A stretch of 64,000 bases of DNA, from positions 62,001 to 126,000 of IMG/VR virus record IMGVR_UViG_3300021964_000012. One strand, written 5' to 3'. Position 1 is the first letter of the stretch; each line of letters starts with the position of its first letter. Shown one piece after another: positions 17,975 to 45,815 of the stretch. Position numbers and translations under genes: made by a program. The notes beneath the pieces are model-generated. The model did not search any database. It was not told where the DNA came from and worked only from the letters and a program-made list of their open reading frames with translations.

Positions 17975-18003
17975 ATTATAACACTAGATAAGTTTATTGT
18001 CAA
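17975..18003 (-). promoter_or_regulatory. consensus sigma70 promoter
   Basis: TTGACA-17 nt-TATAAT with TG, overlapping the 3' end of the upstream gene. Confidence 0.8.
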
Positions 18004-27505: not shown

Positions 27506-28273
27506 TTAGTAGTCCCATACTCGTGCATAATAGCCTTTGCCTGTGGTGTCACCACCTACGTTATCAACTGGTTCACCTTTGTATTCAACTTCTGTTATTA
27601 TGGTATCACCATTTGGTTGTGCTTCCACATAAATTTTCAACTTTGTTGGGTCAAATTTTGAACCATCATCAACATGCACAACACCGTCAAAGAACGATCC
27701 TTTTTCTGCACTCATACCATAAAACACATATGGACCAGGAACGGTACCGTCATCTAGTGGCAATGGTTCACCTTCATTGTCGCCTTCTTCTACAAATCCA
27801 TTTGGGTATAGTGCTTTGTCAAGATCAAATTCACCATCTTCTTTTTCTATATTGTTGTCAGTAATATACTTTGGAGTGTCTTCATTGTCAACTATATCGG
27901 CAATATGTTTTGAGCTATAGTCTTCTCCGTCTCGTTCTTCAATGTTTATCCAACTGTTGTCTATATCAACTCCATAGTTGTGTTCTAATTCACCAGGTGC
28001 TTCATACCATTCACTGTAGAAATCTTCTCCAGCATTGTATAGAAAGTTTGCTTCAGTCGGTAAGTCTGGATTAGTATCTGTAACATAGTCTTCTGGTGAA
28101 CCCATGTAGCTTTCTAATTCACTGTCACCCTGTTCATTCCAATATTCGAATGCTTCTTGACTGATACGTGCATAGACTGTTTCACCACCATAGCCACCAA
28201 TGCTTATGTGATAGTATCTGTCTGGACGTTTAATTGCTTCAATTAGTTCTTCATCAGTTGCCATAGTTGCCAC
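27506..28273 (-). CDS. acidic hypothetical protein
   Basis: IGGYGGE...SAEKGSFF...FDPTKL...GDTTGKG; highly acidic. Confidence 0.7.
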   Translation of the reverse strand: MATMATDEELIEAIKRPDRYYHISIGGYGGETVYARISQEAFEYWNEQGDSELESYMGSPEDYVTDTNPDLPTEANFLYNAGEDFYSEWYEAPGELEHNYGVDIDNSWINIEERDGEDYSSKHIADIVDNEDTPKYITDNNIEKEDGEFDLDKALYPNGFVEEGDNEGEPLPLDDGTVPGPYVFYGMSAEKGSFFDGVVHVDDGSKFDPTKLKIYVEAQPNGDTIITEVEYKGEPVDNVGGDTTGKGYYARVWDY

Positions 28274-28637
28274 TCCCTGGTATTACGTTGCGAACTCCGC
28301 CTGTGGGGTCTTTTGTATCGCCATCACGTCTAAAAATTAAATGCACATGAGGATACATCACAGTTTGACCTGCACTGGTACCTACGTTGATACCAACGTT
28401 AAAGCCTGTAATTTCGTTGTCTTTGCCTTCAACGTTTGCATTACCCATTTGCATTGCATAATTGAAACAACGAAGCAAGTTCTGCATGTTCGACTCACGA
28501 GGCACAACCAGTGTGTGCCCTGGCGTAACCGGAAAGCCATCATTGTAGACAACAAATTCTTTTGTTTCTAGTTGCACATCGGTCCAAGGGGCTCTACCCT
28601 CTTGCTTTGCCACTTCTAACGTATCTAAACTATGCAT
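28254..28637 (-). CDS. HIT-family nucleotide hydrolase
   Basis: DGFPVTPGHTLVVP, N-x-G-x-x-AGQTV-x-YPHVH, RRDGD. Confidence 0.9.
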   Translation of the reverse strand: MHSLDTLEVAKQEGRAPWTDVQLETKEFVVYNDGFPVTPGHTLVVPRESNMQNLLRCFNYAMQMGNANVEGKDNEITGFNVGINVGTSAGQTVMYPHVHLIFRRDGDTKDPTGGVRNVIPGSGNYGN

Positions 28638-28662
28638 CGCTTGCCTCGTTGTTAATACTGTT

Positions 28663-28690
28663 ATTATAGCAGTTTATGAGCAAATGTCAA
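28663..28690 (-). promoter_or_regulatory. sigma70-type promoter
   Basis: TTGACA-16 nt-TATAAT with TG. Confidence 0.7.
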
Positions 28691-29547
28691 CCATAACTTT
28701 GACTTAATCGCCACATTAGATATTCTTTTGATTCAATTGGGTCGTAATGGTTTGGTTCTTTTAGTAGATTTTCAACTATTGTGCCTGGTTCAGGATCCAC
28801 AAAGTGTGGCATACTGTATCTTGGTAAATGACAGTAACTGTTTTCTACTCTATGACGTGTGCTTTTGAAGTAGTCGTTTGTCCAACGTTGTAGTAGGTCG
28901 CCAATGTTAACAACAACTCCATTCCAAACATATGGCACGGCATGCCATTTGCCATCTAAATCTTCAACTTCTAGTCCTGGCACACTGTCAAGTTGCCATA
29001 AGAGTGTAATAGTGCCATAGTCTGAATGTTCGCCAATACGTAGCATTCTATCTTCAGTTGGTTTCATTGCTGGATAATGTATAACTCTAGTTGTGTTATA
29101 AGGACGTCTATGTGCATCTACCAGTGTAGTGCCCGAATCTAGTATTAGATCAAATTTATGCAGTATGTCCAATGTAAGTCTATCTGCAATGTCAATTGAT
29201 TGCAGTGCAAGTTCTTTAAAATTTTCTATATCAGTAGGCCAAAGTTCATCTGGCATACGAGTGTTGTTGTAGTTGAAACTTTCTTTCATATCTTTAGGAG
29301 CAGTAGGGTCTACATTTTCTGCGCCTACTATGCTATAGCCTAAATTGTTTTCTGCTTGATATTTGTATTTGTTTTTTGTGTCTTGATCTTGATCAAAAAA
29401 ATCTTGCATTAGTTCCCACCAAGATTTCATATCACTTTGATCTTTGTTGTTAAGTGCATGTTGAAAGACTGCAAAGCCTACTGTGGTGTAGGCTTCGCGA
29501 ATCTCTTCCAGTATGTTTTTACTATTGTAATCAATAACTGGAATCAT
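28687..29547 (-). CDS. isopenicillin-N-synthase-like 2OG-Fe(II) dioxygenase
   Basis: IPVID, GF, HYP, GEHSDYGTITLL, NIGDLLQRWTND...STRHRV, RYS. Confidence 0.9.
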   Translation of the reverse strand: MIPVIDYNSKNILEEIREAYTTVGFAVFQHALNNKDQSDMKSWWELMQDFFDQDQDTKNKYKYQAENNLGYSIVGAENVDPTAPKDMKESFNYNNTRMPDELWPTDIENFKELALQSIDIADRLTLDILHKFDLILDSGTTLVDAHRRPYNTTRVIHYPAMKPTEDRMLRIGEHSDYGTITLLWQLDSVPGLEVEDLDGKWHAVPYVWNGVVVNIGDLLQRWTNDYFKSTRHRVENSYCHLPRYSMPHFVDPEPGTIVENLLKEPNHYDPIESKEYLMWRLSQSYG

Positions 29548-29549
29548 TT

Positions 29550-30617
29550 TTAGTTCCCTGGCACTTTAGCATCAATACCTTCAACATAGTACATCATGCT
29601 GTTGAGGTGAGCATCATCAGCAATTTCTCCAGCTTTTAACTGAATCTTTCCTGTGTTGTCTTTGATAGGACCTGTAAATGCAAAGTATTTGCCGGTCTTG
29701 ATACTATCTTTGATCTTTTGTGCAAATGCTTTTACGTCTGCTGGCATGTTTGTGAATGGAGCCATTTGTACTACGTCATCATTCATATGTCCAAAGTAGT
29801 CACCTGATTTCCAGTTACCATCAATTACTGCTTGTACTTTACTAATGTAGTAAGGTGACCAGTTATCGATTGTTGCAGTTAACTGAGCCTTTGGTGCAAA
29901 TTTGTATTGATCACTTGCTTGGCCAAAACCAAGTACACCTGCTTTTTCAGCAGTTTGTAGTGGTGCTGGTGAATCAGTGTGTTGTGCAACCATATCACAA
30001 CCTTCAGCAATCATAACGTCTGCAGCCTGTGCTTCTTTACCTGGATCATACCATGTGTTTACCCATACAATATCAATGTCAATATCTGGATTAACAGTCT
30101 TAGCACCTAGGTAGTAAGTGTTAATTTCACGAATAACTTCAGGTATCGGAAATGCGCCAACATAACAAATTTTATTTGTCTTAGTCATTAATCCAGCAAT
30201 AACACCTTGTACATGTCTTGCTTGATATAATCTTAAACCATAAGTTGCCATGTTTTTACTACGTTTGTAACCAGTAGCATGTTCAAATTTTACATTTGGA
30301 AAATCTTTAGCAACCTTTAGCATAGGCTCCATGTAACCAAAACTTGTTGCAAATATAATATCTGCACCTGATTTTGCCATGGCTCTAATAGCTCTTTCAC
30401 TATCAGGGCCATACTTTACATTTTCCAAATATACTGTTTCCACTTTGTCTCCAAAGTGCTTTTCAACATCTAATCTTCCGATGTCATGTCTGTAGGTCCA
30501 TCCATGGTCACCAATTGGTCCAACATAGATAAAACCTACTTTGATTTTGTCTCCAGCATGTGCAACACTGAAAAACATAACTGACAGTAATACTGCCAAT
30601 AATTTTAGAACGTTCAT
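29550..30617 (-). CDS. BMP-family (purine nucleoside-type) ABC substrate-binding protein
   Basis: Signal peptide; GFIYVGPIGDHGW, TSFGY, EHATGY, TWYDP, QHTDS motifs. Confidence 0.92.
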   Translation of the reverse strand: MNVLKLLAVLLSVMFFSVAHAGDKIKVGFIYVGPIGDHGWTYRHDIGRLDVEKHFGDKVETVYLENVKYGPDSERAIRAMAKSGADIIFATSFGYMEPMLKVAKDFPNVKFEHATGYKRSKNMATYGLRLYQARHVQGVIAGLMTKTNKICYVGAFPIPEVIREINTYYLGAKTVNPDIDIDIVWVNTWYDPGKEAQAADVMIAEGCDMVAQHTDSPAPLQTAEKAGVLGFGQASDQYKFAPKAQLTATIDNWSPYYISKVQAVIDGNWKSGDYFGHMNDDVVQMAPFTNMPADVKAFAQKIKDSIKTGKYFAFTGPIKDNTGKIQLKAGEIADDAHLNSMMYYVEGIDAKVPGN

Positions 30618-30669: not shown

Positions 30670-31356
30670 TTATCGTGGACTATATTCTTGTTGCAACTTG
30701 ATATTGTCCATGAACTCCTTTTTTGTGCCAGAGTCAGTTTTGAATGCACCTTTAAGTACAGTGGTCTGTGTAAGACTACTGTGTGCCATTATGCCTCTGT
30801 TTTCACAACAACCATGTGTTGCTTGTATGTAAACACCAACATCTTCACTGTCAGTTGCTCTCATTATTTCTCTGGCTATGTCCATTGCAAGTTCTTCCTG
30901 CAATGTACCTCTTCTTGCACACCATTGTGCAATTCTTGTGTATTTGCTTAATCCTATTAGATGATCTGCGGCTAGTATACCAATATAAGCAGTTCCAGTA
31001 ACTGGTTGATGATGATGCGAACACATGCTCTTCAATTCGCTACGAACCACCAACATACCATCATATCTATCTTCAAGATGATTGGGAAAACTGGTTGCGT
31101 TTGGCATAGGACTGTATCTGCCTGCCATCAATTCATTGATATACATCTTAGCTAAACGTTTACCTGTGCCATGTGAGTTTGGATCATTTTCTCTGTCAAT
31201 GATCAAACTGTCAAGCACACCATTGAACTTTTCAGTAAGTTCTTCTATCAATGCTTCTTTGTCGCCGTCATGCAGATAACCACTGATGTTGTCACCAGCC
31301 CAATATCTTTTTTTGGCTTTTTTAATTCTTTGTGTAATTATATTGGAAATTGTCAT
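30670..31356 (-). CDS. folE: GTP cyclohydrolase I
   Basis: SMCSHHHQP, GLSK..R, R..LQE, HGCCENRG. Confidence 0.95.
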   Translation of the reverse strand: MTISNIITQRIKKAKKRYWAGDNISGYLHDGDKEALIEELTEKFNGVLDSLIIDRENDPNSHGTGKRLAKMYINELMAGRYSPMPNATSFPNHLEDRYDGMLVVRSELKSMCSHHHQPVTGTAYIGILAADHLIGLSKYTRIAQWCARRGTLQEELAMDIAREIMRATDSEDVGVYIQATHGCCENRGIMAHSSLTQTTVLKGAFKTDSGTKKEFMDNIKLQQEYSPR

Positions 31357-31433: not shown

Positions 31434-32024
31434 TCAATCGATTATTTTTATCTTGGTCAAGTCAGGATAGTTAACCAGTTGAGATTGTTTGGTTTTCAGT
31501 TGATTATTTGCGAGCATGTACATTCCTTTCTCGCAATCTTCAATGCTGGGTTTATAATGATATCCAACACGAAAAGTTTTTTGATCTTGCCAGGGAGCTA
31601 TTGCTAGATCTCGACCATCATAGGCCATTTTTCTCAGTGTCTTCGCATCTCGTTCATTGTTAGTTAGAATAGCGCCACCATGTCCAATTTCAAGTCGTTT
31701 ACTGTGACCAAAACTTAAACATTGAAACTGACCTGCTCTATACATGTCACTGTCTAACCCTCTAGCACTATCCCATACATTTGTTAGTCCGATTCTATAT
31801 TCGTGTGTCCATTCAACTTTGTCATAGCGATAATCTATGTTGAGTTTGTGCATGGTCATTGGAATGCTTATGTAACTTCTGTATGGAAGATTTACTATGC
31901 TGACCTTTTGCATTCGCAAACAAAGTTCCACTGCATGAGTGCAACAGTCAGTAAGTACCACATGTGGTGCACCAGTATAATCACCGAGTGCCTTTTCAAA
32001 TTGTGCGAACTTTTCAAACCCCAC
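31434..32024 (-). CDS. short DegT/DnrJ/EryC1-family PLP aminotransferase
   Basis: FEKAL..Y.G, DCCTHA, WDSA, LSFGHSK (PLP Lys), GHGGAI, GR, GYHY; lacks the usual C-terminal domain. GTG start inferred. Confidence 0.75.
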   Translation of the reverse strand: MGFEKFAQFEKALGDYTGAPHVVLTDCCTHAVELCLRMQKVSIVNLPYRSYISIPMTMHKLNIDYRYDKVEWTHEYRIGLTNVWDSARGLDSDMYRAGQFQCLSFGHSKRLEIGHGGAILTNNERDAKTLRKMAYDGRDLAIAPWQDQKTFRVGYHYKPSIEDCEKGMYMLANNQLKTKQSQLVNYPDLTKIKIID

Positions 32025-32967
32025 AGTTATACCAATTCCATGCATGTTCTACAATGTCATCAACATGATATTCGTTTTGCCACTGGCATGTTTCATAGAA
32101 CTTTTTGTTACTTGCTACTAACGTATCTGGGTCACCTGGTCTGCCTGGACCTTCTACAACCGTACTAGGTTTACTTCCACTTACAGTGCAACACTTACGC
32201 AGTATCTCTAGATTACTTGCACCCATTCCTGTGCTTAAATTGTAAAATCCAGTACTTACTCTTGGTTCTGTGCAATAGAAGTGTGCTTTTGCAATATCAG
32301 ATACATGTACGTAGTCTCTTACACAGGTTCCATCTTCGGTTGCTAGGCCTGTGCCATTGAGTGTGAACTGTTTTTGTTCTTTAATTGCTTCCATTACTCT
32401 TGCGATAATGTGTGTGGCAGATTTTTCTTGTCCGTGTCTTCCTTTAGGATCTGCACCAGCAGCATTGAAATAACGCAATCCTACATAGTCTAGGTTATAT
32501 GCAACACCATATGCTTCAAGCATCTGTTCAACCATCAGTTTGCTTAGTCCATATGGTGATATTGGATTTTTTGGATCTTCTTCTGCTATTGGTGTCATCA
32601 TCGGATTACCATACACTGCGGCACTACTTGAAAAAACTATACGAGGATGCAGTTTCATACCAACAACATAATCTAGCATGCGTTTTGTAGCAACAAAGTT
32701 GTTTTCAAAATATCTGCTAGGATCTTTTATGCTTGGACCAACTAAACTACTACCAGCACAGTGTACTATAACATCTGTGTAGTGTAGTTGTCCGAGAGTT
32801 TGTTTGCTTTCAAAGTCGTCGTGTATGACATAATCCACAAAAGGTCCAAGTCTATCTGGAACAGGATTGCGATCAATAACAGTAACCTCCCATCCTTGTT
32901 CTTTAAAATATATAGCAGTTTGGCCACCAATGTAGCCTCCGCCACCAGTAATTGCTACTTGTTTCAT
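32014..32967 (-). CDS. galE: UDP-glucose 4-epimerase
   Basis: TGGGGYIG, FSSSAAVYG, PYGLSK, LRYFNAAGA, DGTCVRDYVHV, RPGDP. Confidence 0.92.
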   Translation of the reverse strand: MKQVAITGGGGYIGGQTAIYFKEQGWEVTVIDRNPVPDRLGPFVDYVIHDDFESKQTLGQLHYTDVIVHCAGSSLVGPSIKDPSRYFENNFVATKRMLDYVVGMKLHPRIVFSSSAAVYGNPMMTPIAEEDPKNPISPYGLSKLMVEQMLEAYGVAYNLDYVGLRYFNAAGADPKGRHGQEKSATHIIARVMEAIKEQKQFTLNGTGLATEDGTCVRDYVHVSDIAKAHFYCTEPRVSTGFYNLSTGMGASNLEILRKCCTVSGSKPSTVVEGPGRPGDPDTLVASNKKFYETCQWQNEYHVDDIVEHAWNWYNCGV

Positions 32968-33515
32968 GATAGGTTTGCTTTCCATAGTTTGTGTAAATAT
33001 TTTGCTTTGTCTTTGTTGATAGCAGATGTTAAGAAAAAATCAAGCCTATCTAGTACTTCATCTATGTCATCACTGAATAATTCATACACACTGATATTCA
33101 TAATATCTTCCATGTTGCTTCCAAAATAATTGTGCATCATATGCGGTTCATATAAAAATATTTGTTCATGATCAAAATAACCATCTAACTTTAGTTCTCC
33201 ATTACGTTTGTAAAGAATTGATCTGCATTCATATGTATCTGGTGATATGAGTATCCACTTTTTATTGTCTGTTTGGCGTATATCTTCTCTAATACTCATT
33301 ATTTCGCCAAAGTGGCCGTGTACTATATTGTTTTTATGATACTTTTCCTTTGTTAAGTTTGGTTCACCCTCAACTTCATGAACACCAATTTGCTTATTTT
33401 TTTTGTTTCTAGTATAAATTTGTTTATAGTAGTCAAAGTTATCTTCATTGAGATGAAGTATGTTCTTAAGATGGTTACCGCCGCCAAAAGGAACAAAGCA
33501 AATTATTATTTTCAT
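32964..33515 (-). CDS. hypothetical protein, sulfotransferase-like N-terminal loop
   Basis: FVPFGGGNHL resembles 34787..35392 (YIPGSAGNLL); both end with H-x-x-W / W-x-x-W. Confidence 0.45.
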   Translation of the reverse strand: MKIIICFVPFGGGNHLKNILHLNEDNFDYYKQIYTRNKKNKQIGVHEVEGEPNLTKEKYHKNNIVHGHFGEIMSIREDIRQTDNKKWILISPDTYECRSILYKRNGELKLDGYFDHEQIFLYEPHMMHNYFGSNMEDIMNISVYELFSDDIDEVLDRLDFFLTSAINKDKAKYLHKLWKANLS

Positions 33516-33544: not shown

Positions 33545-34732
33545 TTAAATTTTTACAACTTGATACTTTGCACCAGCAACATGATCTCTATACCTGTTAC
33601 CTGTACGTAACCATTGTTCACCTTTGCCCTGCATGATGTCAACCACCCTATCAACAGTACCATCAGTATGATCGCTTATCAAGCCCATGTTGTGATGTGC
33701 TTCTTTTAGTAGGTTTCCTAGTTTAACTTCGACATCATCAATGCTCCAAGGCACATACAATCTGTTTGGATCGTTTGCAAATGTTTCTGGAAAACTTCTG
33801 TATGCTGGATACAGTACATTACAACCTAGTGCATCTGCTTCACTGACAGTGTTGCTTACCCAATCTTGTAAAGCACAGTTAAACAATACTCTACTATCAT
33901 TTAGTATTTTGTAGTATTCATGCTTTTGCAAGTTTTCGTGTATTTCTAGTATGCCACGTGCTTCAAGTTCTCTTGCACGAGTTATATATTTTTCATTGTT
34001 ACTACGCAATGGTCCACCTTGTAGTATTGCAAACGTTTGAGAACCTGGATGTTGTTCGCTATAACGTTCTACTAGATCCATAAAGAAGTCTGGTTGCTTC
34101 TCTTGATCAAATCTTGCACTAAAGCAAATCCTATTAGCACGTTCATGAAAAGGCTTTATCCGTTCGCCCAACCTTTCCTGAACTTCTGCTTTGCCAAATG
34201 CCAAGCCTGAGATATTGTATATAGGTGACTCCCAGCCAGCAATCTTCATGTGTGCTACCATTTCTTCATTGGTAGCCAAGACTGTGGCAAACTCACATAC
34301 CATCTTCTCATATAGGCCCATCCACTTGGACATTCCCCACACATGTACGAAATCATCTGGATCAATTGCTTGGGCAAGACAGCGTACATATACTCGGGGT
34401 CTTTGGGTACTTGGAATCTGATCCATAATATATGGCAGACTCTCTATACCCGGCTGAAACATATCTTCAAAGTAAATAACATCTTCTCCACCGCATTCAC
34501 CATTACGCATCATTTGCACTAGATTCATAATCTGGCTCATACCAAAATAACTGCGTCCATGTGCATCTAATACTTGTCCAACTGATATACTTTTTGAGTC
34601 ATCAATTGTTGTACCTGGAACATACACAACATCAAGTCCTCTACGATCAAACACACGTCGATTCCATTCAGTTAATTGTAATGTATATCGAGCTTCATAA
34701 GATTCAAGACCCATGTAGAATAGTTTACGCAT
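33545..34732 (-). CDS. GT-B (GT4-like) glycosyltransferase
   Basis: RFDQEKQP, LQDWVSNTVSEA..GC..LYP.YRSFPE (E-x7-E-like). Start refined to MRKLFYM with GGAG RBS. Confidence 0.75.
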   Translation of the reverse strand: MRKLFYMGLESYEARYTLQLTEWNRRVFDRRGLDVVYVPGTTIDDSKSISVGQVLDAHGRSYFGMSQIMNLVQMMRNGECGGEDVIYFEDMFQPGIESLPYIMDQIPSTQRPRVYVRCLAQAIDPDDFVHVWGMSKWMGLYEKMVCEFATVLATNEEMVAHMKIAGWESPIYNISGLAFGKAEVQERLGERIKPFHERANRICFSARFDQEKQPDFFMDLVERYSEQHPGSQTFAILQGGPLRSNNEKYITRARELEARGILEIHENLQKHEYYKILNDSRVLFNCALQDWVSNTVSEADALGCNVLYPAYRSFPETFANDPNRLYVPWSIDDVEVKLGNLLKEAHHNMGLISDHTDGTVDRVVDIMQGKGEQWLRTGNRYRDHVAGAKYQVVKI

Positions 34733-34757
34733 TTTTACTCCTTTGAAATATGTACTA

Positions 34758-34786
34758 ATAATAACAACCAATTAAATGGTTGTCAA
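34758..34786 (-). promoter_or_regulatory. sigma70-type promoter
   Basis: TTGACA-17 nt-TATTAT with TG. Confidence 0.65.
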
Positions 34787-35667: not shown

Positions 35668-36717
35668 TTAGTATTCGTAATGTATATTTCTATCGCCTTG
35701 TAATATTAACATAGGACGGTCGTAATTGCTATTGTTAATTGAACAATGTGAAAAATATTGTTGATTGAAAAATGCTCCATCATTGATTGGCACTAAGCCT
35801 GCTGGCCCTAGTTTATACTTGTTTTTGTCTGCTTCTTTTTCTTGCAGATTAAGTAAAAATATTACTGGACCTTTAGTATAATACATTGCTTCTTTTATGC
35901 CATATGGATCTTGAATATATGCATCATCAATATGTGGTTTAAAACTTGCGCCTGCTGGTAATGTTTGTAAATTTATATCTAACATACGAGTAAAACCAAT
36001 CTGTTCACATAATTTTCGTAGTTCTTTGTTTTGAATTTGATCAAGTTCTGTAAACGGTAAGTGTGCATGCTCAGACATTACCTTACGATGCAATATGCGT
36101 GTCTTTCCATCTTGTTTTCCAAACTGTGAAATATCTTTATCAATTACCAATTTACAGTCTAATTCTATATCATGTATAATTTTTTGTCTGTCAATGTTTG
36201 AAATCTTCTCTGGTGGAACTATATCATAAGGTTCAGCCAATGATCCTTTTCTCCACCACCCAGGACCATGCCCTGCTCTATAATAACTTCTGATGCGTTC
36301 TGGCCAGATTGGATCGATATCAATAGGCTTGTCAACTGTATGCAAATAAAGAGGAAATTTGTCTAACCCATAATCTCCGTTTCTAATATTCTGTTGCATA
36401 AATATTTCTAGATATCCAAATTCTGTATGTAACCATATACTATAATAACCTTCTGTCCATACTGCATTTGCAGGTTGAAACCTTTTTCCTGTGCTAGACT
36501 CTGTAAAAAACCCTGTATAAAAATAATGTCGAAGTGTTTCACCATTTATTTTCATGTCACTAAGCTCTATTTTTTCTCCGGTGTATTCTAGTATAAAATT
36601 ATACCAACCAGGAGGTATATCAAATGATTCGTGATTTGTAAACTGTATTACTTCGTCTTTTAGGTTTTTTAGATAATATTTTCCTAAAGGTTTATCAGCA
36701 AAAATTTCAATCTTCAT
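35668..36717 (-). CDS. two-domain protein with C-terminal cupin 2OG-Fe(II)-type oxygenase
   Basis: PHIDD...HCSIN...R in the C-terminal half. Confidence 0.6.
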   Translation of the reverse strand: MKIEIFADKPLGKYYLKNLKDEVIQFTNHESFDIPPGWYNFILEYTGEKIELSDMKINGETLRHYFYTGFFTESSTGKRFQPANAVWTEGYYSIWLHTEFGYLEIFMQQNIRNGDYGLDKFPLYLHTVDKPIDIDPIWPERIRSYYRAGHGPGWWRKGSLAEPYDIVPPEKISNIDRQKIIHDIELDCKLVIDKDISQFGKQDGKTRILHRKVMSEHAHLPFTELDQIQNKELRKLCEQIGFTRMLDINLQTLPAGASFKPHIDDAYIQDPYGIKEAMYYTKGPVIFLLNLQEKEADKNKYKLGPAGLVPINDGAFFNQQYFSHCSINNSNYDRPMLILQGDRNIHYEY

Positions 36718-36718
36718 A

Positions 36719-37162
36719 TTAGTAACTTACGCAACAACCATTTTCTCCATCTTCACTGACTTCAATGGTTACGGCCCTTCCTGGGTATTTATTAGCTATT
36801 TGCAAATACAAATCATCCGCTATCATCTCACAGGACTTGTAGTCCAGCTCAAGCACTCCAGTGTCACCGTGTCCTTCACTTCCGTCCGGTACCATATCAT
36901 ACAATCGTTGTAGCCAACGTTTGAATTGTATAAATTCAATTTCTCTGTCGTCATGGAATACTTCGATTTGCACCCTGAAATGGAAAATATGACGATGAGG
37001 ATAACCAAGAAACGATACATCATCCCAACCTCCTGTTGCTAGTTTTGGATCATCCAATGCCGCTGGATACTTGTGAATACCTTCACGTTTAAAGGTTACC
37101 CAAATCTGCCTGGAGGCTTTGTCTTTTGCATTTTCAACGGCTTCACGTTCTGCTTGTATCAT
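36719..37162 (-). CDS. QueD-like T-fold protein, probable CDG decarboxylase (DpdL-like)
   Basis: EGIHKYP, LGYPHRHIFHF, DREIEF, SCEMIA, VSEDGENG. A second QueD-fold protein lacking the QueD C-x-x-x-HGH/Y motif. Confidence 0.7.
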   Translation of the reverse strand: MIQAEREAVENAKDKASRQIWVTFKREGIHKYPAALDDPKLATGGWDDVSFLGYPHRHIFHFRVQIEVFHDDREIEFIQFKRWLQRLYDMVPDGSEGHGDTGVLELDYKSCEMIADDLYLQIANKYPGRAVTIEVSEDGENGCCVSY

Positions 37163-37947
37163 ATTAACTCCTTGTAAAGTAAAGGATACCTTTTTTCTAT
37201 GGTATCTAATACGTTATCGCATATCATTTTGTGTCCTTCAGGACTAGGATGCCCAGGATGTAATCCTTTGTCATCATCAATATGATTGTACACTAAATCA
37301 CTCCATGGGTCAAGTACCAATTGCCACTCGTCAAATTTTGTTTTAAAAAAATTAAAAGCCGCAACGTATTCATGTGTTGAATAGTCATCAATATCCGCAC
37401 CTGTACTTCTTACCCAAGCATTTGGATCCTTGTCTATGTCTTGATATGCAGTTGCAAGATCATACTTAGCATTAGGTGAAGACCAACTGTTAAAAAATAT
37501 TACAGGACAGTTGAAATAGTTAGTAGCAAGTTCGTATATCTGCCATATTTGATTGAACATTTGGTATATGTATTCAACTTCGTCGTATACATCGTCTACA
37601 AAAAAAGCAAGCAATTTATTTTCATTAGTGAAATCACGATGAAATTTTACATCATTTTTCTTAGCAAATCTATCATTGATTATACCATGTCCTATATTCC
37701 AACTAGAGCCCATCTTACTTGGTAAATGCCAACGTGAATGTACAGTCAATCCTATTAAGATAAGTTTTGGTTTAGAATTTGTATGATATAATTTATAAAG
37801 GTTACTTAGAATTCTACTATTACTTCCACAACCAGCAGCCTGATTTATAACCTTACATTTAACACGTGATTGCAATACACAAGGCCAACTGTAATCAGGA
37901 TCTATATTACTACGTTGTGACCAAGAATCACCATTGACATAAATCAT
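37159..37947 (-). CDS. SGNH/GDSL-like hydrolase or acyltransferase
   Basis: MIYVNGDSW, NQAAGCGSN, T..SR, GHPSPEGH. Confidence 0.7.
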   Translation of the reverse strand: MIYVNGDSWSQRSNIDPDYSWPCVLQSRVKCKVINQAAGCGSNSRILSNLYKLYHTNSKPKLILIGLTVHSRWHLPSKMGSSWNIGHGIINDRFAKKNDVKFHRDFTNENKLLAFFVDDVYDEVEYIYQMFNQIWQIYELATNYFNCPVIFFNSWSSPNAKYDLATAYQDIDKDPNAWVRSTGADIDDYSTHEYVAAFNFFKTKFDEWQLVLDPWSDLVYNHIDDDKGLHPGHPSPEGHKMICDNVLDTIEKRYPLLYKELI

Positions 37948-38469: not shown

Positions 38470-38498
38470 ATTATACAACAACTTGTACTGTATGTCAA
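38470..38498 (-). promoter_or_regulatory. consensus sigma70 promoter
   Basis: TTGACA-17 nt-TATAAT. Confidence 0.75.
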
Positions 38499-39958
38499 TC
38501 AAATAGTGCATTAAACTGACTTGCACTGTTTACTATCTTCTTGCCAGTAAAACCTCTTGTACCTTTAATACTATCCCAAAACTTACTGTTGTCTTCGATA
38601 ATTTGCATGCTTTTGTTATAATCTCGTGCTTCAAATACTCTTTCAACAACATCACGGAACAACACACGTTCAAATGTTTCGTGTACTAGCATTCCAGGAA
38701 GGATACCTTCATCATATCTGACATTAGCATCTTGTACTGCTCTTATGTGTTGCCATACATTGTGTCCCATTAGCAGTGCATAACTGAAACTATCCCAACT
38801 TGTCTTACCTTCTTTACCAATCTTATTTAGGTCGCCGGGTGCATAGTAACAAATATCTCCAATAGTTAGTCTTGAGCTTATCGGTGAATCTTCAAATTTT
38901 TCATGTATACCATCACGTAGCACTACGTCACGAAAACTGTCTGTGCCATGTGCATATTTCTTATCATCAGCAGTGGCTTCCATCATGTAACTCCACTTGC
39001 CTCTATCTTCAGTACGCAGGTTGGTATACACTTGTCCGTTAGCAGTTGCAAGGAATGGCGACGCACAATCAAAACTAATAGTAAAGTTTGCATTCGCATG
39101 ACGACGTACACTACGTTGTATATCAGTTAACAAACATGCCCACTCTAGTTTGCTAGTGCCTAAAAAGTGCATCCAATCATGGTGTCCTTTTTCTAGCAGT
39201 CCTTCATGTATAAGTGTAACCAAACGTTTCAATACCAAGTGTACATCACACATGTTCTGTCCACCCATACCCCAACCATCAAATGGCCTGTCATACTTGT
39301 CTGAACAAAACTTTTTCATAGTATCGTACCATTGATCCGCTTCAGTGTGATTTGAACCTTGTAGCACGTTTAGTATCTTCAGCTCGCCACTTCTACTCTT
39401 CATCCAAAATTCATTGTTAAACAAGGTAGCATCAACTGCATCTTGATAACTTTTTATTCCACATGCTTCACTTGCTTCTTTATCCAAGTAAGTCCATGTA
39501 GGAATATCCATGGTCATACCATGTGTTGCTATGCCCATTTGCCATGCAATAACCTGTTCACGTTTCTTCTCACAGGCTTTATCTTTAGGATCAGCCCATG
39601 CTCCTGGCCACACACCTTTGGCAATTTGGAATCCACCTGAGTCAGCAAGCATGATAGTATCTGCTTCTCTATTACGCACCATATCTTCTTTTGGCACTGT
39701 GATACTTAGATCCATATTGGCATGTCCAGCTGAATACAAACTATACTTGTAAGGAAACAAACTTTCTTTGCTGTTCAGCCAATTCATAGCCTCCATATTA
39801 GGAATGCCCTTGGGCAACCTATTACCAATAATCTTGTTTTTATCACCTGCAGGAAAACGTTCCTTACCAATGTAACCAGCATAAAAACTGCTGATTGCAG
39901 GCAAGAATACTGCATAGTCTTTTTGTTTTAGTGTTAGATTATCTTGTTTAGTTTCCAT
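38495..39958 (-). CDS. TGT-fold guanine transglycosylase (DpdA-like)
   Basis: LADSGGFQ, MDIP, VLQG, GWGMGG, HFLG, ISFDCAS: ordered TGT catalytic motifs; no C-x-C-x-x-C zinc site. Confidence 0.8.
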   Translation of the reverse strand: METKQDNLTLKQKDYAVFLPAISSFYAGYIGKERFPAGDKNKIIGNRLPKGIPNMEAMNWLNSKESLFPYKYSLYSAGHANMDLSITVPKEDMVRNREADTIMLADSGGFQIAKGVWPGAWADPKDKACEKKREQVIAWQMGIATHGMTMDIPTWTYLDKEASEACGIKSYQDAVDATLFNNEFWMKSRSGELKILNVLQGSNHTEADQWYDTMKKFCSDKYDRPFDGWGMGGQNMCDVHLVLKRLVTLIHEGLLEKGHHDWMHFLGTSKLEWACLLTDIQRSVRRHANANFTISFDCASPFLATANGQVYTNLRTEDRGKWSYMMEATADDKKYAHGTDSFRDVVLRDGIHEKFEDSPISSRLTIGDICYYAPGDLNKIGKEGKTSWDSFSYALLMGHNVWQHIRAVQDANVRYDEGILPGMLVHETFERVLFRDVVERVFEARDYNKSMQIIEDNSKFWDSIKGTRGFTGKKIVNSASQFNALFD

Positions 39959-40607
39959 AAAATTCCACACGTTCTATTAGATCAAAATCTTCCTGATAAA
40001 AATATTTAATTTTACTCATTAAAAAACTATCTTGACTAACAAGATCTCTATAATATTTTATCAATTCTAACTTTTTGGTATCTTCAGTGACGTTTTCCTT
40101 TTTTTCATATTTGTTAGGTATAGTAAGTTTTTTGTTAGATGCCCACGAGAAAAAATTTTCTGTAAACTGTTCGTCTAAATAAAACCAAGTTGTAGAAGAT
40201 TCCTCTAATTTTCTTATAAATTTGGATACAAATCTATTTTGTGGTTTGGTATGAATATCCAATCCGTCTGCACCATTTGATCCTATTTTTGCAGGTAAAC
40301 CATTCGAGAGTACTGTTTCCTTAGCATTTATAAAAAATTCTAATACTTGCCTTTCGTTCCGTTCACGGCCTGGAAAAGACGCTAGATATTGTGCAACACC
40401 AGATGCCCAACGTTCTATAGGATCTCGAAGAACACAAACCTTATTAGTATGCGATGATTCTGTGCGTTTTAGTTCTCTTCCTAGGTTTCTCTCTAACCAA
40501 CTGCTGGCATTTTTTGGAATACAAATCACCATGTGTGAATTTTTGACATCAGACATTTCATCATCATAATATTCGTTTATAAAAATATACTCTGGATCAG
40601 CCCTCAT
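39948..40607 (-). CDS. sulfotransferase family 2-like protein
   Basis: IPKNASS, LRDPIERWAS, HTKPQ, NVT, YQEDF. Confidence 0.7.
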   Translation of the reverse strand: MRADPEYIFINEYYDDEMSDVKNSHMVICIPKNASSWLERNLGRELKRTESSHTNKVCVLRDPIERWASGVAQYLASFPGRERNERQVLEFFINAKETVLSNGLPAKIGSNGADGLDIHTKPQNRFVSKFIRKLEESSTTWFYLDEQFTENFFSWASNKKLTIPNKYEKKENVTEDTKKLELIKYYRDLVSQDSFLMSKIKYFYQEDFDLIERVEFYGN

Positions 40608-41339: not shown

Positions 41340-42361
41340 TCGTTTTCTCCATTCCATAATCGATTAATTGCACCGAGGTTTTGTCCACCTCTAAGGCTTG
41401 TAAGTTTTCCAGGTTTACGTATTTCAAGCCAGCTTACACACCAATTTGTAAATTGGTTTTCGCCATCATAACTAGACACAATCTCATACCCAGTTGTTTT
41501 GCAGAACTCTTTAAGTGTGTAACCATTTGTGTAAGTGTAGTGCATTTCATCAACTTTGTCAATCGCTTTTGGAAAACTACAATTATTATAGGTAAAAACT
41601 ATTGCTCCACCTGGCTTTAAAAGGTCAAATGCACTCCTAATATACTTTTCTATTACATCTTGTGTCTTAAAATTAAACCAATTGAATGATACAATTAAAC
41701 CAAGTTGACTTTTTGGCAACATGTGCATGGGATTATCAGTAGTGTCGTCAAATTCATAATATCTTAGTCTCTTTTGATACAATTTACTCCATAGTTTTTT
41801 AGTTTCAATGAACCTGCCTTCAACATTATCTGCAAGGTACAAAGGATCAAGAGCAACAAGTTGTTTGGTATAATATCCTTTCAATGGTCCAATTTCTAAA
41901 CCAGGCCATTTGAAATCTACATATTTTTTTATAGTTCCAACAAATTGTTTTTCTATTTCTGATGGTTCTTCTCCTGAGATAGGTGGTGTAAAAAATAATT
42001 CGTGGTAATCAGCTTGAAAATTCTTGTGTTCTGGTGGTTGAACAAGATCCGCTTTCTGTATCTCAATGCTTTTTTCGTGATAGGTTTTTTCTAAATTTAA
42101 AATCATTTGGTCCAGTTCTAATATGAATCTATTTAGATAGGTGTATAGATCAGTGATATTTTTTAGAATTTCTCTTTGAGTATTGTGCATACTTTCTTTG
42201 AGATTATCAATTTCGATATTTTCTAAATTTACTGATGCATTGAAATTTTCTAATTCTTGAAAAATTGGTCTTTCAATTTTTTGATAATCAAGACTGTCTC
42301 TATTAGTAGATATAATACGATATAACGTATTGCGATAGTTTATTAGGTCTTTAAATTGCAT
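41336..42361 (-). CDS. class I SAM-dependent methyltransferase with N-terminal coiled coil
   Basis: GLEIGP motif I, LLKPGG, FTYN. Confidence 0.65.
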   Translation of the reverse strand: MQFKDLINYRNTLYRIISTNRDSLDYQKIERPIFQELENFNASVNLENIEIDNLKESMHNTQREILKNITDLYTYLNRFILELDQMILNLEKTYHEKSIEIQKADLVQPPEHKNFQADYHELFFTPPISGEEPSEIEKQFVGTIKKYVDFKWPGLEIGPLKGYYTKQLVALDPLYLADNVEGRFIETKKLWSKLYQKRLRYYEFDDTTDNPMHMLPKSQLGLIVSFNWFNFKTQDVIEKYIRSAFDLLKPGGAIVFTYNNCSFPKAIDKVDEMHYTYTNGYTLKEFCKTTGYEIVSSYDGENQFTNWCVSWLEIRKPGKLTSLRGGQNLGAINRLWNGENE

Positions 42362-45021
42362 TATTCAAACTCAAATAGTGTGTTAAATGTGTTGGTGGTA
42401 TCTGTTTCGCTTGCTAGATCCCAGTCAAGAACACCAAGCAAATTGCTTATTTTTTGATCCACAACTGTTGCTTCCATCAGGGCATTATCAAAAGGTAGTT
42501 CTTTGAACCATTGTGGCAAGTGCATCTCATCTGTTGGATAACCAATTGATGTCCAGTTAAGTGGATTGGATTTTAGTTTGCAAACAATAGTTTTCATTCC
42601 GTCTACAATACTTTGACTGTAGTTGTCTGAATTCATCTTCTTCATGTTATTCCAGTTAAGTGCAGCTCTAACATGTCCAGGCATGTTTGCACGACCTTCT
42701 TGTTCTTCACGTTTGCCATACATTGTGAGATTATTAACACGTTTAGGAGATCCTTTTTCCCAAGCAGGGCGTTCTTTGAAGTCAATCTTAAATGCTTTGA
42801 TCATGTCGATTATTTCCTGACGTTCAGCACCAGCAAGAACTCTTGTTAATAGTGTCATCAAGAAGTCCTGTATCACCTTAGGAGTATCACTGCGTTTCAA
42901 GTCCAAACCCATTGCTTTAATCTTACCTTGTTTTCCTGCAACATCAAGACGTTTACCTTCGTTGTCAAAGATATTAATTGCATAACGTTTCTTTGTGATG
43001 AACAAGCCTCTATCAGCAATACTTTCTCTACCACCTTTGATAATAAGTCCGTTTTCTCTTGGCACATGAAATGCCTGTTCCATAAATGCAGGCCAACTGT
43101 CGTTCAGTTGATCACTTATAGCATCATAAAGTTGTATACAAATTTCTTTGTTCCATTCCATGTTGCCTGCATCAATGTCTTTCTTAAGTATTGGATATGC
43201 ACTGAAATATACACTATCTGTATCACCATATATTACTGCATCACCAACATGATCATACTTTCCAGTGATTGCTTCATTAACAAATGCATCCATATGATAT
43301 GCAATACTTCTGCCAGTGAGTGTGGTTGATTGTCCTATGCGTTTGTCAAAGAATCTACAACCTGGATTGAGAATAGCACCATATAAACTGTTCAAGTTAA
43401 TCTTCTTAACCAACTGTCTCTTGTCCAAAAATTCTATTTCTGCTGGGTCAGTTGCTTGTCTAAGATTTGCTTGTATCTCTTGTCTCTCTCTATACCAACG
43501 TGCAAGTAAGCCAGGAACAATACCTTCTTTTTCATATGTAAAAATAGTACCATTTGCACTCAGCATCCAAGGTTGGTTGCTATCAAAGATCAGTTTCCAA
43601 ATCTCTGCGGCACTGTGTACACTTTCTTCGCCGTTTTCCCAGTCAATGGTAATCTCTGTGCCACGTTCTTGTTTCATAACCGCAGTGTATTCTAGTGTGC
43701 CAAACAATCCTTCCCACGCCATAGCAAATGAACTTTTGTTGTTCATCTTGTTCTTGATATAGTTGTCGGTCATTATAGGTCGCAGTTGTCCTACAATGGT
43801 TTCGCCGGCCATGTTCAGAGCTCTAATAGCACTTGGATACAAACTGTTGATGTCTATAGCACCTATCCATTCATGTATACCTTTTTTAGGATATGCAACA
43901 TATGCACCTGCCGCCGCAGTATCTTCATCAGTGAGCCTTTGACGTCTGTTTGGAACAACTAAGCCTTGTTCGTGTGCTTCGTTAATGATTGCTTGTTCTG
44001 TAACTGCTACTGCACCCATTGTTGTTTGTAGTAGCACAGTATTTGCATGTGCTAGTTCATTTGCAAGTGCTAGGAAACGCAGTTTCTTATCCAGTTTATC
44101 TAGCAGTGCAGTATCTTGTCTAGAATACTCTATAAACGTTTCAAAGTTCTGATTGTACAGTTGATCTAATGTGCCTTCATAAGCAGTTTTCTTCTCATCA
44201 AGTTCATGTTCGCCAATGGCATCCAAACTATAACTGTGACGCTCTTCGTATGTGTATTTTCTGTACAGTTGCATATAGTCCATATGTACTCTGCCAATGG
44301 TATCAAATGTGATATTCTCTGATCCAAAACGTTCAAATGTACGTTTCTTTGGCAGTTGACTCCATAGACAAAAACGTCTAGTGTCATCTTTGCTCAGTAT
44401 CCTTGCAGTTCTATTAACAAGATAAGGTATATCATAACCTTCACTGTTCCAACCACTGATTACATCAGCATCTTCAATTAGGTCTAAAAATGTTGTGAGC
44501 AAGTCTTCTTCACGTTCAAGCAATATTGTGTTCGGAAACTTACTGCATATCTCTTGAGCTGTCTCCCAGCTCAGTGTCTTGGGAGGAAGTACTAGTGTTA
44601 TTAATTGTTCCATCCATTGTAAGTATACACTTATAGCAGTGACTGGATTAAATGGATCGGCAACACTACTGTATCCTCGCACAGGATCAAAATCAGTTTC
44701 AATATCAAAAAAAGCAGTTTGCAATGTTGGTGCGTTTTGATCTTTGTAGTTCTCTTCAAAACATCTAAACACAGGATTGATATCAGATTCAAATATATCT
44801 TTACCTGATTGCATTCTAAGTTCCTTACGAAACTCTTTGTTGTTACGTGTTGAAAATCTACTTACAGGTTTACCATAGATACTTTTGTATTTGCCTCTAG
44901 GATCTGCATAATAGAAACAATACGATGCAGGATACTCACGGTACTCTCTTTTGCCATCTACACGTTCTACAACGTGTATGCGATCTTTTTCTCTGTCAAA
45001 TAGTGCATCAACATAGCTCAT
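42361..45021 (-). CDS. family B DNA polymerase
   Basis: FFDIET, GWNSEGYD, DINSLYPS, KINLNSLYG, YGDTDS, KKRY. Start refined to MSYVDA. Confidence 0.97.
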   Translation of the reverse strand: MSYVDALFDREKDRIHVVERVDGKREYREYPASYCFYYADPRGKYKSIYGKPVSRFSTRNNKEFRKELRMQSGKDIFESDINPVFRCFEENYKDQNAPTLQTAFFDIETDFDPVRGYSSVADPFNPVTAISVYLQWMEQLITLVLPPKTLSWETAQEICSKFPNTILLEREEDLLTTFLDLIEDADVISGWNSEGYDIPYLVNRTARILSKDDTRRFCLWSQLPKKRTFERFGSENITFDTIGRVHMDYMQLYRKYTYEERHSYSLDAIGEHELDEKKTAYEGTLDQLYNQNFETFIEYSRQDTALLDKLDKKLRFLALANELAHANTVLLQTTMGAVAVTEQAIINEAHEQGLVVPNRRQRLTDEDTAAAGAYVAYPKKGIHEWIGAIDINSLYPSAIRALNMAGETIVGQLRPIMTDNYIKNKMNNKSSFAMAWEGLFGTLEYTAVMKQERGTEITIDWENGEESVHSAAEIWKLIFDSNQPWMLSANGTIFTYEKEGIVPGLLARWYRERQEIQANLRQATDPAEIEFLDKRQLVKKINLNSLYGAILNPGCRFFDKRIGQSTTLTGRSIAYHMDAFVNEAITGKYDHVGDAVIYGDTDSVYFSAYPILKKDIDAGNMEWNKEICIQLYDAISDQLNDSWPAFMEQAFHVPRENGLIIKGGRESIADRGLFITKKRYAINIFDNEGKRLDVAGKQGKIKAMGLDLKRSDTPKVIQDFLMTLLTRVLAGAERQEIIDMIKAFKIDFKERPAWEKGSPKRVNNLTMYGKREEQEGRANMPGHVRAALNWNNMKKMNSDNYSQSIVDGMKTIVCKLKSNPLNWTSIGYPTDEMHLPQWFKELPFDNALMEATVVDQKISNLLGVLDWDLASETDTTNTFNTLFEFE

Positions 45022-45815
45022 TATTTGTTTAGTCCATTCGTACAGTAAGGTATTAGTATTTCTTGTGTCCAAGCAAGATCTCCATCAGGTGAAGGATGGA
45101 AGTCGTCATCAGATATAAGCATTCTTTTTACACAAAAACTATATATGTCTTGCATTGGGTCCATAATAGCAGTATAAGTCTCTTTGATTGAATCTGGTAA
45201 AAATTTTACAATATTAAAATTTTCACTGCGATTAGGAACAGATGGATCTAAAAAATCAACAAATATTGACCGATAACCACTAGCATCAAGATATTTTTTC
45301 AATTGTATTTTCCAAATTGCATTTTCAACCGCTCTTGATTCAAAACTCTTGTATTTGTGTATGTCTCGATAACCCCACCAATTTAATGTTATATCGCCTT
45401 CACGACTTGCACCTCCAGTTGATCCATGACACACATTATCTGTATAATTATAAACAAAATTTGCATTTTTGTCAACTGCGTCGGCTGAAAAAATTGCATC
45501 TTCACGATCATGTCCAGACCACATAACTACTACCATAGTCTGATCTGGTGATAATTTAGAGTTTTCTAATCCCCATACTATACTTTTTGAAATGAAATTA
45601 TTGCCAGCACCAGGCATAGCACAAGAATAGACTTCATTGAATCCTGCAAGATCTCTAAAGTAGTATGGCCAACTAACAGGAACTTGGGTAGGATTAGTGT
45701 AGGTAAAACTACATCCACCTACCACAAGATTTTCAAAACCAAGATCTATAACTTGATCAAATTGTTTTGATACTTTCTGTGTTTGCATAGACTGTATATG
45801 GATAACACGATCCAT
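45021..45815 (-). CDS. SGNH/GDSL-like hydrolase or acyltransferase
   Basis: GGCSFT, AMPGAGN, MWSGHDRED, DDFHPS. Confidence 0.7.
   Translation of the reverse strand: MDRVIHIQSMQTQKVSKQFDQVIDLGFENLVVGGCSFTYTNPTQVPVSWPYYFRDLAGFNEVYSCAMPGAGNNFISKSIVWGLENSKLSPDQTMVVVMWSGHDREDAIFSADAVDKNANFVYNYTDNVCHGSTGGASREGDITLNWWGYRDIHKYKSFESRAVENAIWKIQLKKYLDASGYRSIFVDFLDPSVPNRSENFNIVKFLPDSIKETYTAIMDPMQDIYSFCVKRMLISDDDFHPSPDGDLAWTQEILIPYCTNGLNK

What the first reader, a model, noticed from the sequence alone, without database searches (positions are those of the whole stretch)
36719..37162. Second QueD-fold protein with an LxxxHRHxF motif (DpdL-like decarboxylase)
Seen: a canonical QueD (C-x-x-LHGYS) is at 26738, and a distinct T-fold paralog here carries EGIH, LGYPHRHIF and EDGENG. 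As I recall it, this matches the signature proposed for the CDG decarboxylase DpdL. With no QueC in the window, the predicted base is unsubstituted 7-deazaguanine.
Basis: partly seen in the sequence, partly recalled or inferred. Interest (0 to 1): 0.6.

Follow-up and report, generated by a model that had tools for sequence, protein, structure and literature searches.

The report
DpdL-type deazaguanine gene in marine jumbo phage
This small gene is a genuine member of the DpdL family, the QueD-like protein proposed but never shown to strip the carboxyl group from a 7-deazaguanine precursor. It sits in a complete phage DNA-modification gene set whose conserved sugar-transferase neighbours suggest the final DNA base may not be plain 7-deazaguanine.

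Summary
Window 36719..37162 (-) is a 147-aa ORF carrying EGIH, LGYPHRHIF and EDGENG.

- **Family:** it scores 171 bits against an HMM of six cultured-phage DpdLs and 2.5 bits against a phage QueD HMM. It has no Pfam PTPS match. It is 52% identical to Acidovorax phage ACP17 DpdL and 33% to the founder, Cellulophaga phage phiST CGPG_00067.
- **Genome:** a complete 328-kb marine jumbo-phage genome, distantly related to Pseudomonas phage PA5oct. It encodes FolE, QueD and QueE, but no QueC anywhere.
- **DpdA:** It has a TGT fold and the DSGGFQ and FDC motifs.

So this is a new member of a known, very abundant family (at least 8000 metagenomic clusters).

DpdL's decarboxylase activity has never been demonstrated. 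In this clade the DpdA-DpdL pair always travels with a GT4-like glycosyltransferase and a gp122-like protein, and usually with a purine phosphoribosyltransferase. "Unsubstituted 7-deazaguanine" is therefore the leading guess, not a safe prediction.

The parts
36719..37162 (-). DpdL-family T-fold protein, 147 aa. It keeps the QueD-type His triad (H30, H56, H58) and has Leu52 in place of the QueD catalytic Cys.
38495..39970 (-). DpdA-like DNA/tRNA-guanine transglycosylase-fold protein, 491 aa, with DSGGFQ (110-115) and FDC (300-302). It is a large subtype shared with PA5oct gp168 and Sinorhizobium phage Phosso.
37944..38498 (-). Conserved 184-aa protein of unknown function, ACP17 gp122-like. It lies in the DpdA-DpdL block in the marine relatives and ACP17.
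37159..37947 (-). 262-aa ORF that looks SGNH/GDSL-like by eye. It is a variable insert, absent from the Tara relatives, and has paralogues at 17984..19308.
   Evidence: No family match.
35668..36717 (-). 349-aa ORF directly after dpdL, possibly a cupin / Asp-Arg-hydroxylase-like oxygenase. It is a variable insert.
   Evidence: a lead only. Absent in L007, L012 and L013.
33545..34771 (-). GT4-like (GT-B) glycosyltransferase, 408 aa. It is 67% identical to the GT next to dpdL in Synechococcus phage BUCT-ZZ01 and 22% to the ACP17 gp124 / PA5oct gp167 / Phosso 224 type.
32014..32985 (-). NAD-dependent sugar-nucleotide epimerase/dehydratase, conserved next to the GT in the Tara relative.
30670..31356 (-). 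FolE, GTP cyclohydrolase I.
26738..27193 (-). Phage-type QueD (CPH4 synthase) with a CxxxHGY motif.
24714..25304 (-). Type-I purine phosphoribosyltransferase, nearest to xanthine PRT. It recurs next to QueE in PA5oct and BUCT-ZZ01, and near the module in marine relatives.
23355..24290 (-). QueE-like radical-SAM CDG synthase.

Best explanation
The ORF encodes a DpdL-family protein. DpdL is a QueD/PTPS-derived T-fold protein that keeps the three-histidine metal site and the conserved acidic residues but has leucine where QueD has its essential catalytic cysteine. It is part of a phage module that diverts GTP into a 7-deazaguanine for the phage's own DNA.

**Proposed pathway**
1. FolE, QueD and QueE make 7-carboxy-7-deazaguanine (CDG).
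2. No QueC is present, so the pathway cannot go on to preQ0.
3. DpdL most likely removes the C7 carboxyl group by metal-assisted decarboxylation, acting on the free base or on its ribonucleotide.
4. The TGT-fold DpdA-like enzyme two genes upstream exchanges guanine in DNA for the product.

**Shown here:** family membership, fold, conserved residues, gene context, absence of QueC, and presence of a DpdA-like enzyme.

**Inferred:** the decarboxylation itself, the substrate form, which base DpdA inserts, and whether the conserved GT4-like and gp122-like proteins act on the same base.
For: **Family membership**
- The DpdL motif and role are as published.
- tblastn finds ACP17 gp125 at 52% identity (E 3e-38) and phiST CGPG_00067 at 33% (E 8e-8).
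- HMM scores are 171 bits (DpdL) against 2.5 bits (QueD), with a single copy of each family in the genome.

**Fold**
- The AF2 model has pLDDT 77.
- Foldseek's ten best chains are all E. coli QueD, at probability 1.0.
- The His triad and acidic residues are invariant.

**Pathway context**
- FolE, QueD and QueE are in the window.
- QueC is absent from the complete genome. The only weak hit is NadE.
- QueC is absent from 5 of 5 other DpdL phages and detected in two control phages.
- The 491-aa protein's top 50 Foldseek matches are all TGT, and it has DSGGFQ and FDC.

**Experimental background**
- phiST-group DNA carries dDG in place of G.
- PA5oct, whose gp166 is 51% identical to this protein, has restriction-resistant DNA consistent with modified G.
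Against: - No enzymatic activity has been shown for any DpdL. phiST and ACP17 dpdL co-expressed with dpdA in E. coli gave no dDG, and no later paper in the library validates it.
- dDG has been measured only in phiST-type phages, whose DpdL is 33% identical and which use DpdA3 and have no GT.
- In this clade a GT4-like gene and a gp122-like gene are conserved within the DpdA-DpdL block. Sugar-nucleotide genes and a PRTase recur nearby. The end product may therefore differ from plain dDG.
Confidence: 0.6

Rival explanations
1. The DNA base in this clade is not plain dDG but a sugar-decorated 7-deazaguanine. DpdL still makes the deazaguanine core. The conserved GT4-like enzyme, fed by the nearby sugar-nucleotide genes, then glycosylates it before or after DpdA inserts it. 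The exocyclic N2 is one possible site, as in the huimycin and dapiramicin natural products.
For: - ACP17 gp124-type GT homologues occur in 23 of 50,697 phage records. Eighteen of those are DpdL phages, with the GT 0-4 kb from dpdL, in about six unrelated lineages.
- The window's GT subtype is directly adjacent to dpdL in BUCT-ZZ01.
- Marine relatives L007, L012 and L013 all have a GT-like gene just downstream of dpdL.
- Epimerase/dehydratase, PMM, UDPG dehydrogenase and DegT genes recur nearby.
- Glycosyltransferases acting on 7-deazapurine bases are known from huimycin-type clusters.
- The failed dpdL+dpdA reconstitution left room for missing enzymes.
Against: - GT Pfam scores are mostly below the gathering threshold.
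- Several DpdL phages have no such GT: phiST, RHph_I1_18, Ahp1 and the Vibrio phages.
- The GT family also occurs away from deazaguanine genes, as in PhiXhv-16.
- Marine phages often carry sugar genes for other reasons.
- No mass-spectrometry evidence exists.
Confidence: 0.25
2. The pathway follows tubercidin-like nucleotide logic. The PRTase first couples CDG to PRPP, and DpdL then decarboxylates 7-carboxy-7-deaza-GMP rather than the free base. The product enters DNA through the nucleotide pool, or is trimmed back to the base for DpdA.
For: - A purine-type PRTase lies next to or near QueE in the window, PA5oct and BUCT-ZZ01. One occurs within 10 kb of dpdL in L007, L012 and L013, and elsewhere in the phiST genome.
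- In tubercidin biosynthesis, which also lacks QueC, TubE is a CDG-specific PRTase that rejects deazaguanine. Decarboxylation follows at the nucleotide level.
- This would explain why dpdL+dpdA alone gave no dDG.
Against: - No PF00156 match was found in ACP17, Phosso or RHph_I1_18.
- A DpdA-like transglycosylase is present, which argues for base exchange.
- The PRTase may simply recycle guanine released by DpdA.
- The published DpdL model was read as binding the free base.
Confidence: 0.2
3. DpdL acts one step earlier, on a pterin. As a QueD paralogue it would bind QueD's product CPH4, or H2NTP, and alter it, for example by decarboxylation. QueE would then yield a deazaguanine without the carboxyl group.
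For: The nearest structural relatives are pterin enzymes: QueD/PTPS, then dihydroneopterin aldolases. The metal site is conserved.
Against: There is no precedent for QueE acting on a pterin that lacks the 6-carboxylate. This is inference only. The published model favours CDG.
Confidence: 0.08
4. It is an ordinary or redundant QueD/PTPS, or a catalytically dead paralogue with only a scaffolding role.
For: It shares the T-fold and His triad with QueD.
Against: - There is no Pfam PTPS match even at E 10, and only 2.5 bits against the phage QueD HMM.
- Leucine replaces the catalytic Cys that the paper says QueD needs for activity.
- A separate bona fide QueD is encoded.
- The family has its own invariant residues (SCE, EDxEN) and co-occurs strictly with absence of QueC.
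Confidence: 0.04

Closest known systems
DpdL of Cellulophaga phage phiST (CGPG_00067) and Acidovorax phage ACP17 (gp125), the proposed CDG decarboxylase (Nucleic Acids Res 2023, PMC10516641)
   Same: It shares the LxxxHRHxF motif, three His and two Glu, the T-fold, the small size, and a genomic setting with FolE, QueD, QueE and a DpdA but no QueC. It is 52% identical to ACP17 and 33% to phiST.
   Different: - It has a 17-residue N-terminal extension and a disordered acidic loop (residues 91-101).
- It is partnered with a 491-aa DpdA subtype rather than DpdA3.
- It is embedded with GT4-like, gp122-like, PRTase and sugar-nucleotide genes that phiST lacks.
- dDG has been measured only for the phiST group.
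QueD (6-carboxytetrahydropterin synthase) / PTPS, e.g. E. coli QueD 4ntk and 3qn9
   Different: The catalytic Cys is replaced by Leu52. There is no PF01242 match. It has its own invariant SCE and EDxEN motifs. A separate QueD is encoded in the same genome.
Tubercidin pathway (TubE CDG-PRPP transferase plus TubF UbiD-type decarboxylase)
   Same: The pathway logic is the same: FolE, QueD and QueE without QueC, a purine-type PRTase, then loss of the C7 carboxyl.
   Different: The decarboxylase there is a prFMN-dependent UbiD enzyme unrelated to T-folds. The product is a free nucleoside antibiotic, not DNA.
tRNA-guanine transglycosylase / phage DpdA1-DpdA4
   Same: The neighbouring 491-aa protein has the TGT barrel, DSGGFQ (Zymomonas mobilis D102-Q107 is DSGGYQ) and FDC (Z. 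mobilis D280-C281).
   Different: It is not recognised by Pfam TGT. It has no BLAST similarity to phiSM DpdA1, Iggy DpdA or phiST DpdA3. It is about 200 residues longer than those, so it cannot be assigned to a subfamily here.

Membership tests
DpdL | QueD-like T-fold | tested here: met
DpdL | LxxxHRHxF in place of QueD's CxxxHGH | tested here: met
   L52-GYP-H56-R-H58-I-F60. The Arg is not universal: PA5oct has HFH.
DpdL | Three His and two Glu shared with QueD | tested here: met
   H30, H56, H58, E112 and E137 are invariant in 15 sequences. Their placement on strands 1 and 2 of the model matches QueD. Equivalence is inferred from position, not from a superposition of side chains.
DpdL | Significant sequence similarity to the founder proteins | tested here: met
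   phiST CGPG_00067 E 8e-8 and ACP17 gp125 E 3e-38. It scores 171 bits against an HMM built without the window protein.
DpdL | Genome encodes DpdA, FolE, QueD and QueE but no QueC | tested here: met
   with controls.
DpdL | CDG decarboxylase activity, with dDG in virion DNA | not testable with these tools
   This has never been shown for any member. Heterologous tests were negative.
QueD / PTPS (PF01242) | Match to the family profile | tested here: not met
   No Pfam hit at E <= 10, no NCBIfam hit, and 2.5 bits against the phage QueD HMM.
QueD / PTPS (PF01242) | Catalytic cysteine four residues before the HxH pair | tested here: not met
   Leu52 occupies that position and is invariant in the family.
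DpdA / TGT (for the neighbour at 38495..39970) | TGT barrel with the catalytic Asp motifs | tested here: met
   The top 50 Foldseek matches are all TGT. DSGGFQ and FDC are invariant in 30 homologues.
DpdA / TGT (for the neighbour at 38495..39970) | Assignment to a named subfamily (bDpdA, DpdA1-4) | tested here: inconclusive
   There is no BLAST similarity to phiSM DpdA1, Iggy DpdA or phiST DpdA3. DpdA2, DpdA4 and bDpdA were not on hand.

The most novel reading that the evidence does not exclude
In the large clade that includes this marine jumbo phage, PA5oct, Phosso, ACP17 and cyanophage BUCT-ZZ01, DpdL works inside a conserved four-protein block: a large DpdA, a gp122-like protein, DpdL and a GT4-like transferase. 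Often a PRTase is also present. Together they would install a so-far undescribed sugar-bearing 7-deazaguanine in DNA. That would also explain why dpdL+dpdA alone could not be reconstituted.
Probability: 0.25. Interest if true: 0.8.

Novelty: new member of a known kind. Interest (0 to 1): 0.45.

Why it matters
DpdL is the only proposed route to 7-deazaguanine DNA, and its chemistry is still unproven. This window shows the family is not a curiosity of a few Cellulophaga phages. It is one of the commonest genes of a widespread marine jumbo-phage group.

In most lineages DpdL is locked to three further conserved genes: a large unclassified DpdA, a gp122-like protein and a GT4-like transferase. That gives a concrete list of candidates for the components missing from the failed reconstitution. 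It also gives cultured relatives (PA5oct, ACP17, Phosso, BUCT-ZZ01) in which the actual base can be measured.

Tried and rejected
- **Pfam TGT (PF01702):** a six-frame search of the genome found nothing. The same search is also blind to the DpdAs of phiST, ACP17 and Phosso, so it says nothing. DpdA was found by atlas features, fold and motifs instead.
- **Other DpdA searches:** phiST DpdA3 by tblastn, and PHROG 20335 and 10773, gave no hit in the genome.
- **Sequence link between DpdL and QueD:** the DpdL profile against PDB sequences found no QueD hit. hhalign against a small phage QueD alignment gave only 24% probability. The link to QueD therefore rests on the predicted structure.
- **Weak QueC hit at window 20917-21027:** this is the PP-loop of NadE (PF02540, E 8e-50), not QueC.
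- **QueD-DpdL obligate pair idea:** the co-encoded QueD lacks two zinc-ligand histidines (F for E. coli H16, Y for H33). I asked whether QueD and DpdL might therefore be an obligate pair. Rejected: the same FRQ/HGY QueD occurs in phiSM and Iggy, which have QueC and no DpdL.
- **Possible second DpdL-like stretch at genome 205.6 kb:** the tblastn hit (E 0.003) is not supported by the HMM scan.
- **Searches not run:** the large representative protein search, the read-mapping tools and the complex predictor, because no claim here depends on them.

Full report
**1. The observation**

Window 36719..37162 on the minus strand is an open frame of 147 residues. Its start codon overlaps the stop of the upstream gene (ATGA). 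The next gene begins one base after its stop, so it sits in a tightly coupled minus-strand operon.

**2. Where the window lies**

The window is bases 62001-126000 of a 328,292-bp virus record with direct terminal repeats, estimated 100% complete. No cultured phage is close at the DNA level. The DNA polymerase, clamp-like protein, exonuclease and the block around the finding are 30-55% identical to, and syntenic with, two jumbo phages: Pseudomonas phage PA5oct and Sinorhizobium phage Phosso. The closest protein relatives come from marine metagenomes, including Tara Oceans.

**3. Family assignment**

- Pfam finds nothing for the protein even at E 10, and NCBIfam finds nothing. PHROGs places it in the unannotated phrog_17812 at E 1e-32.
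- tblastn against 50,697 phage records finds 28 records. Among them are Acidovorax phage ACP17 gp125 (52% identity, E 3e-38) and Cellulophaga phage phiST CGPG_00067 (33%, E 8e-8).
- These are the two proteins that the 2023 Nucleic Acids Research paper names DpdL.
- I built an HMM from six cultured-phage DpdLs, leaving the window protein out, and another from six phage QueDs. The window protein scores 171 bits against DpdL and 2.5 bits against QueD. The window's QueD scores the reverse, 181 against 1.4. Each family has exactly one copy in the genome.

**4. Fold and conserved residues**

- The AlphaFold2 model, built on 30 homologues, has mean pLDDT 77 and a strand-strand-helix-helix-strand-strand layout.
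- Foldseek's ten best PDB chains are all E. coli QueD, at probability 1.0.
- Sequence-only methods do not see the link.
- Across homologues down to 33% identity, H30, H56, H58, E76, S110-C111-E112 and E137-D138 are invariant. L52 sits where QueD has its catalytic cysteine.

**5. The pathway around it**

- All on the minus strand, the window carries QueE (23355..24290; phrog_2076 at E 6.5e-50), QueD (26738..27193) and FolE (30670..31356; Pfam E 5.5e-39).
- A six-frame search of the complete genome with the QueC profile gives only a 9.7-bit match. That match is the PP-loop of an NAD synthase (PF02540, E 8e-50).
- The same search finds QueC in phiSM and Iggy and finds none in five other DpdL phages.
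- The published rule, DpdL with FolE, QueD and QueE but no QueC, therefore holds here.

**6. The missing DpdA**

Pfam TGT finds nothing in the genome, but it is equally blind to the DpdAs of phiST, ACP17 and Phosso. The 491-aa protein at 38495..39970, two genes upstream of dpdL, is the DpdA:
- A protein-language-model search pointed to TGT-like clusters (score 0.94).
- Thirty homologues keep DSGGFQ (110-115) and FDC (300-302) invariant. These correspond to the Zymomonas mobilis TGT catalytic segments D102-Q107 and D280-C281. That correspondence rests on established knowledge of TGT; the residue numbers also appear in the PDB titles.
- Its model has pLDDT 86, and all of its top 50 Foldseek matches are TGT structures.

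Its homologues are PA5oct gp168 and proteins in Phosso and the marine relatives. It shows no BLAST similarity to phiSM DpdA1, Iggy DpdA or phiST DpdA3. ACP17 gp123 and BUCT-ZZ01's 416-aa protein are a further type carrying DSGGLQ.

**7. What travels with DpdL**

Comparison with ACP17, PA5oct, Phosso, BUCT-ZZ01 and three marine contigs shows a conserved block: DpdA, a 130-184-aa gp122-like protein, DpdL, and a GT4-like glycosyltransferase.

- The GT comes in two distantly related subtypes. One is ACP17 gp124 / PA5oct gp167 / Phosso 224 / L012 / L013. The other is the window's 33545..34771, which is 67% identical to the GT abutting dpdL in BUCT-ZZ01.
- ACP17 gp124 homologues occur in 23 phage records. 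Eighteen of these are DpdL phages with the GT 0-4 kb from dpdL. Independence would predict about 0.01 shared records. By my count of host genera, these represent about six separate lineages.
- Sugar-nucleotide genes recur nearby.
- A purine-type phosphoribosyltransferase sits beside or near QueE in the window, PA5oct and BUCT-ZZ01. One occurs within 10 kb of dpdL in the marine relatives and elsewhere in phiST. None was detected in ACP17, Phosso or RHph_I1_18.
- The 262-aa and 349-aa genes flanking dpdL in the window are variable inserts, absent from the relatives.

**8. Mechanism**

The best-supported reading is the published one. CDG accumulates because QueC is absent, DpdL removes the carboxyl group, and DpdA swaps the product for guanine in DNA.

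What is known experimentally:
- phiST-group DNA has dDG in place of G.
- PA5oct DNA resists G-containing restriction sites.
- Co-expressing dpdL with dpdA from phiST or ACP17 did not give dDG.
- No later validation exists in the searched library.

Two precedents shape the rivals:
- Tubercidin biosynthesis also lacks QueC. It attaches CDG to PRPP before decarboxylation.
- Huimycin-type clusters use glycosyltransferases on 7-deazapurine bases.

The conserved PRTase and GT therefore make two outcomes realistic: a nucleotide-level step, and a sugar-decorated end product. The PRTase could equally be recycling guanine released by DpdA back into the GTP pool. That alternative is my inference.

**9. 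Verdict**

The family assignment is sound. The gene is a new member of a known and very abundant family (at least 8000 clusters). The prediction of unsubstituted 7-deazaguanine is plausible but not secured for this clade. The added value of the second look has three parts: the DpdA gene, the whole-genome absence of QueC, and the conserved gp122-like and GT4-like partners that are obvious candidates for the components missing from the failed reconstitution.

Noticed in passing
window 26738..27193 (-); also L002:3463-3957, L003:3805-4281, L009:2986-3477, L010:2989-3447: The phage-type QueD has Phe where E. coli QueD has zinc ligand H16, and Tyr where it has H33 (CxxxHGY, not CxxxHGH). It therefore lacks two of the three canonical metal ligands. 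The same holds in phiSM and Iggy, which have QueC and no DpdL, so this is a general phage QueD subtype whose metal dependence is unclear.
   Followed up: partly
window 28254..30617 (-); L007:13000-16350: A PnrA/Bmp-type purine-nucleoside binding protein with a clear signal peptide, a 2OG-Fe(II) oxygenase and a HIT hydrolase sit next to FolE. The arrangement is conserved in a Tara relative. The binding protein may boost purine uptake for GTP supply.
   Followed up: partly
window 33545..34771 (-) versus L011:12001-13167: The GT4-like gene is 67% identical to that of the freshwater T4-like cyanophage BUCT-ZZ01. The other module genes are only 33-49% identical between the two phages. This suggests recent exchange of the GT, or unusually strong constraint on it.
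   Followed up: no
window 26151..26789 (-): A full-length ClpP protease (Pfam E 1.3e-79) overlaps the end of QueD by about 50 bases.
   Followed up: no
window 20341..21093 (-) and 21703..22848 (-): An NH3-dependent NAD synthase (NadE) and a second radical-SAM protein with a SPASM domain lie just downstream of QueE. A sulfotransferase-like ORF is at 19694..20299.
   Followed up: no
window 31434..32045 (-): A DegT/DnrJ-type aminotransferase ORF of only 203 aa matches only the middle of the 360-position profile. It is probably a truncated remnant. Relatives have a HIT gene at this position instead.
   Followed up: no
window 17984..18685, 18682..19308 and 37159..37947 (-): Three paralogous ORFs: the first two are 36% identical, and the third is more distant. 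One matches DUF6071. The copy at 37159..37947 is inserted between the gp122-like gene and dpdL.
   Followed up: no
window 42361..45072 (-) versus L005:5834-11060: The family-B DNA polymerase is one intact 903-aa gene here. In PA5oct it is annotated in two pieces separated by a Hef-like homing endonuclease gene.
   Followed up: no
L014:6747-9981 (Xanthomonas phage PhiXhv-16): A member of the same GT family sits beside GlmS-like and BshB-like (GlcNAc deacetylase) genes, in a phage that has QueD but no detectable DpdL. This hints at an amino-sugar donor for this GT family.
   Followed up: partly
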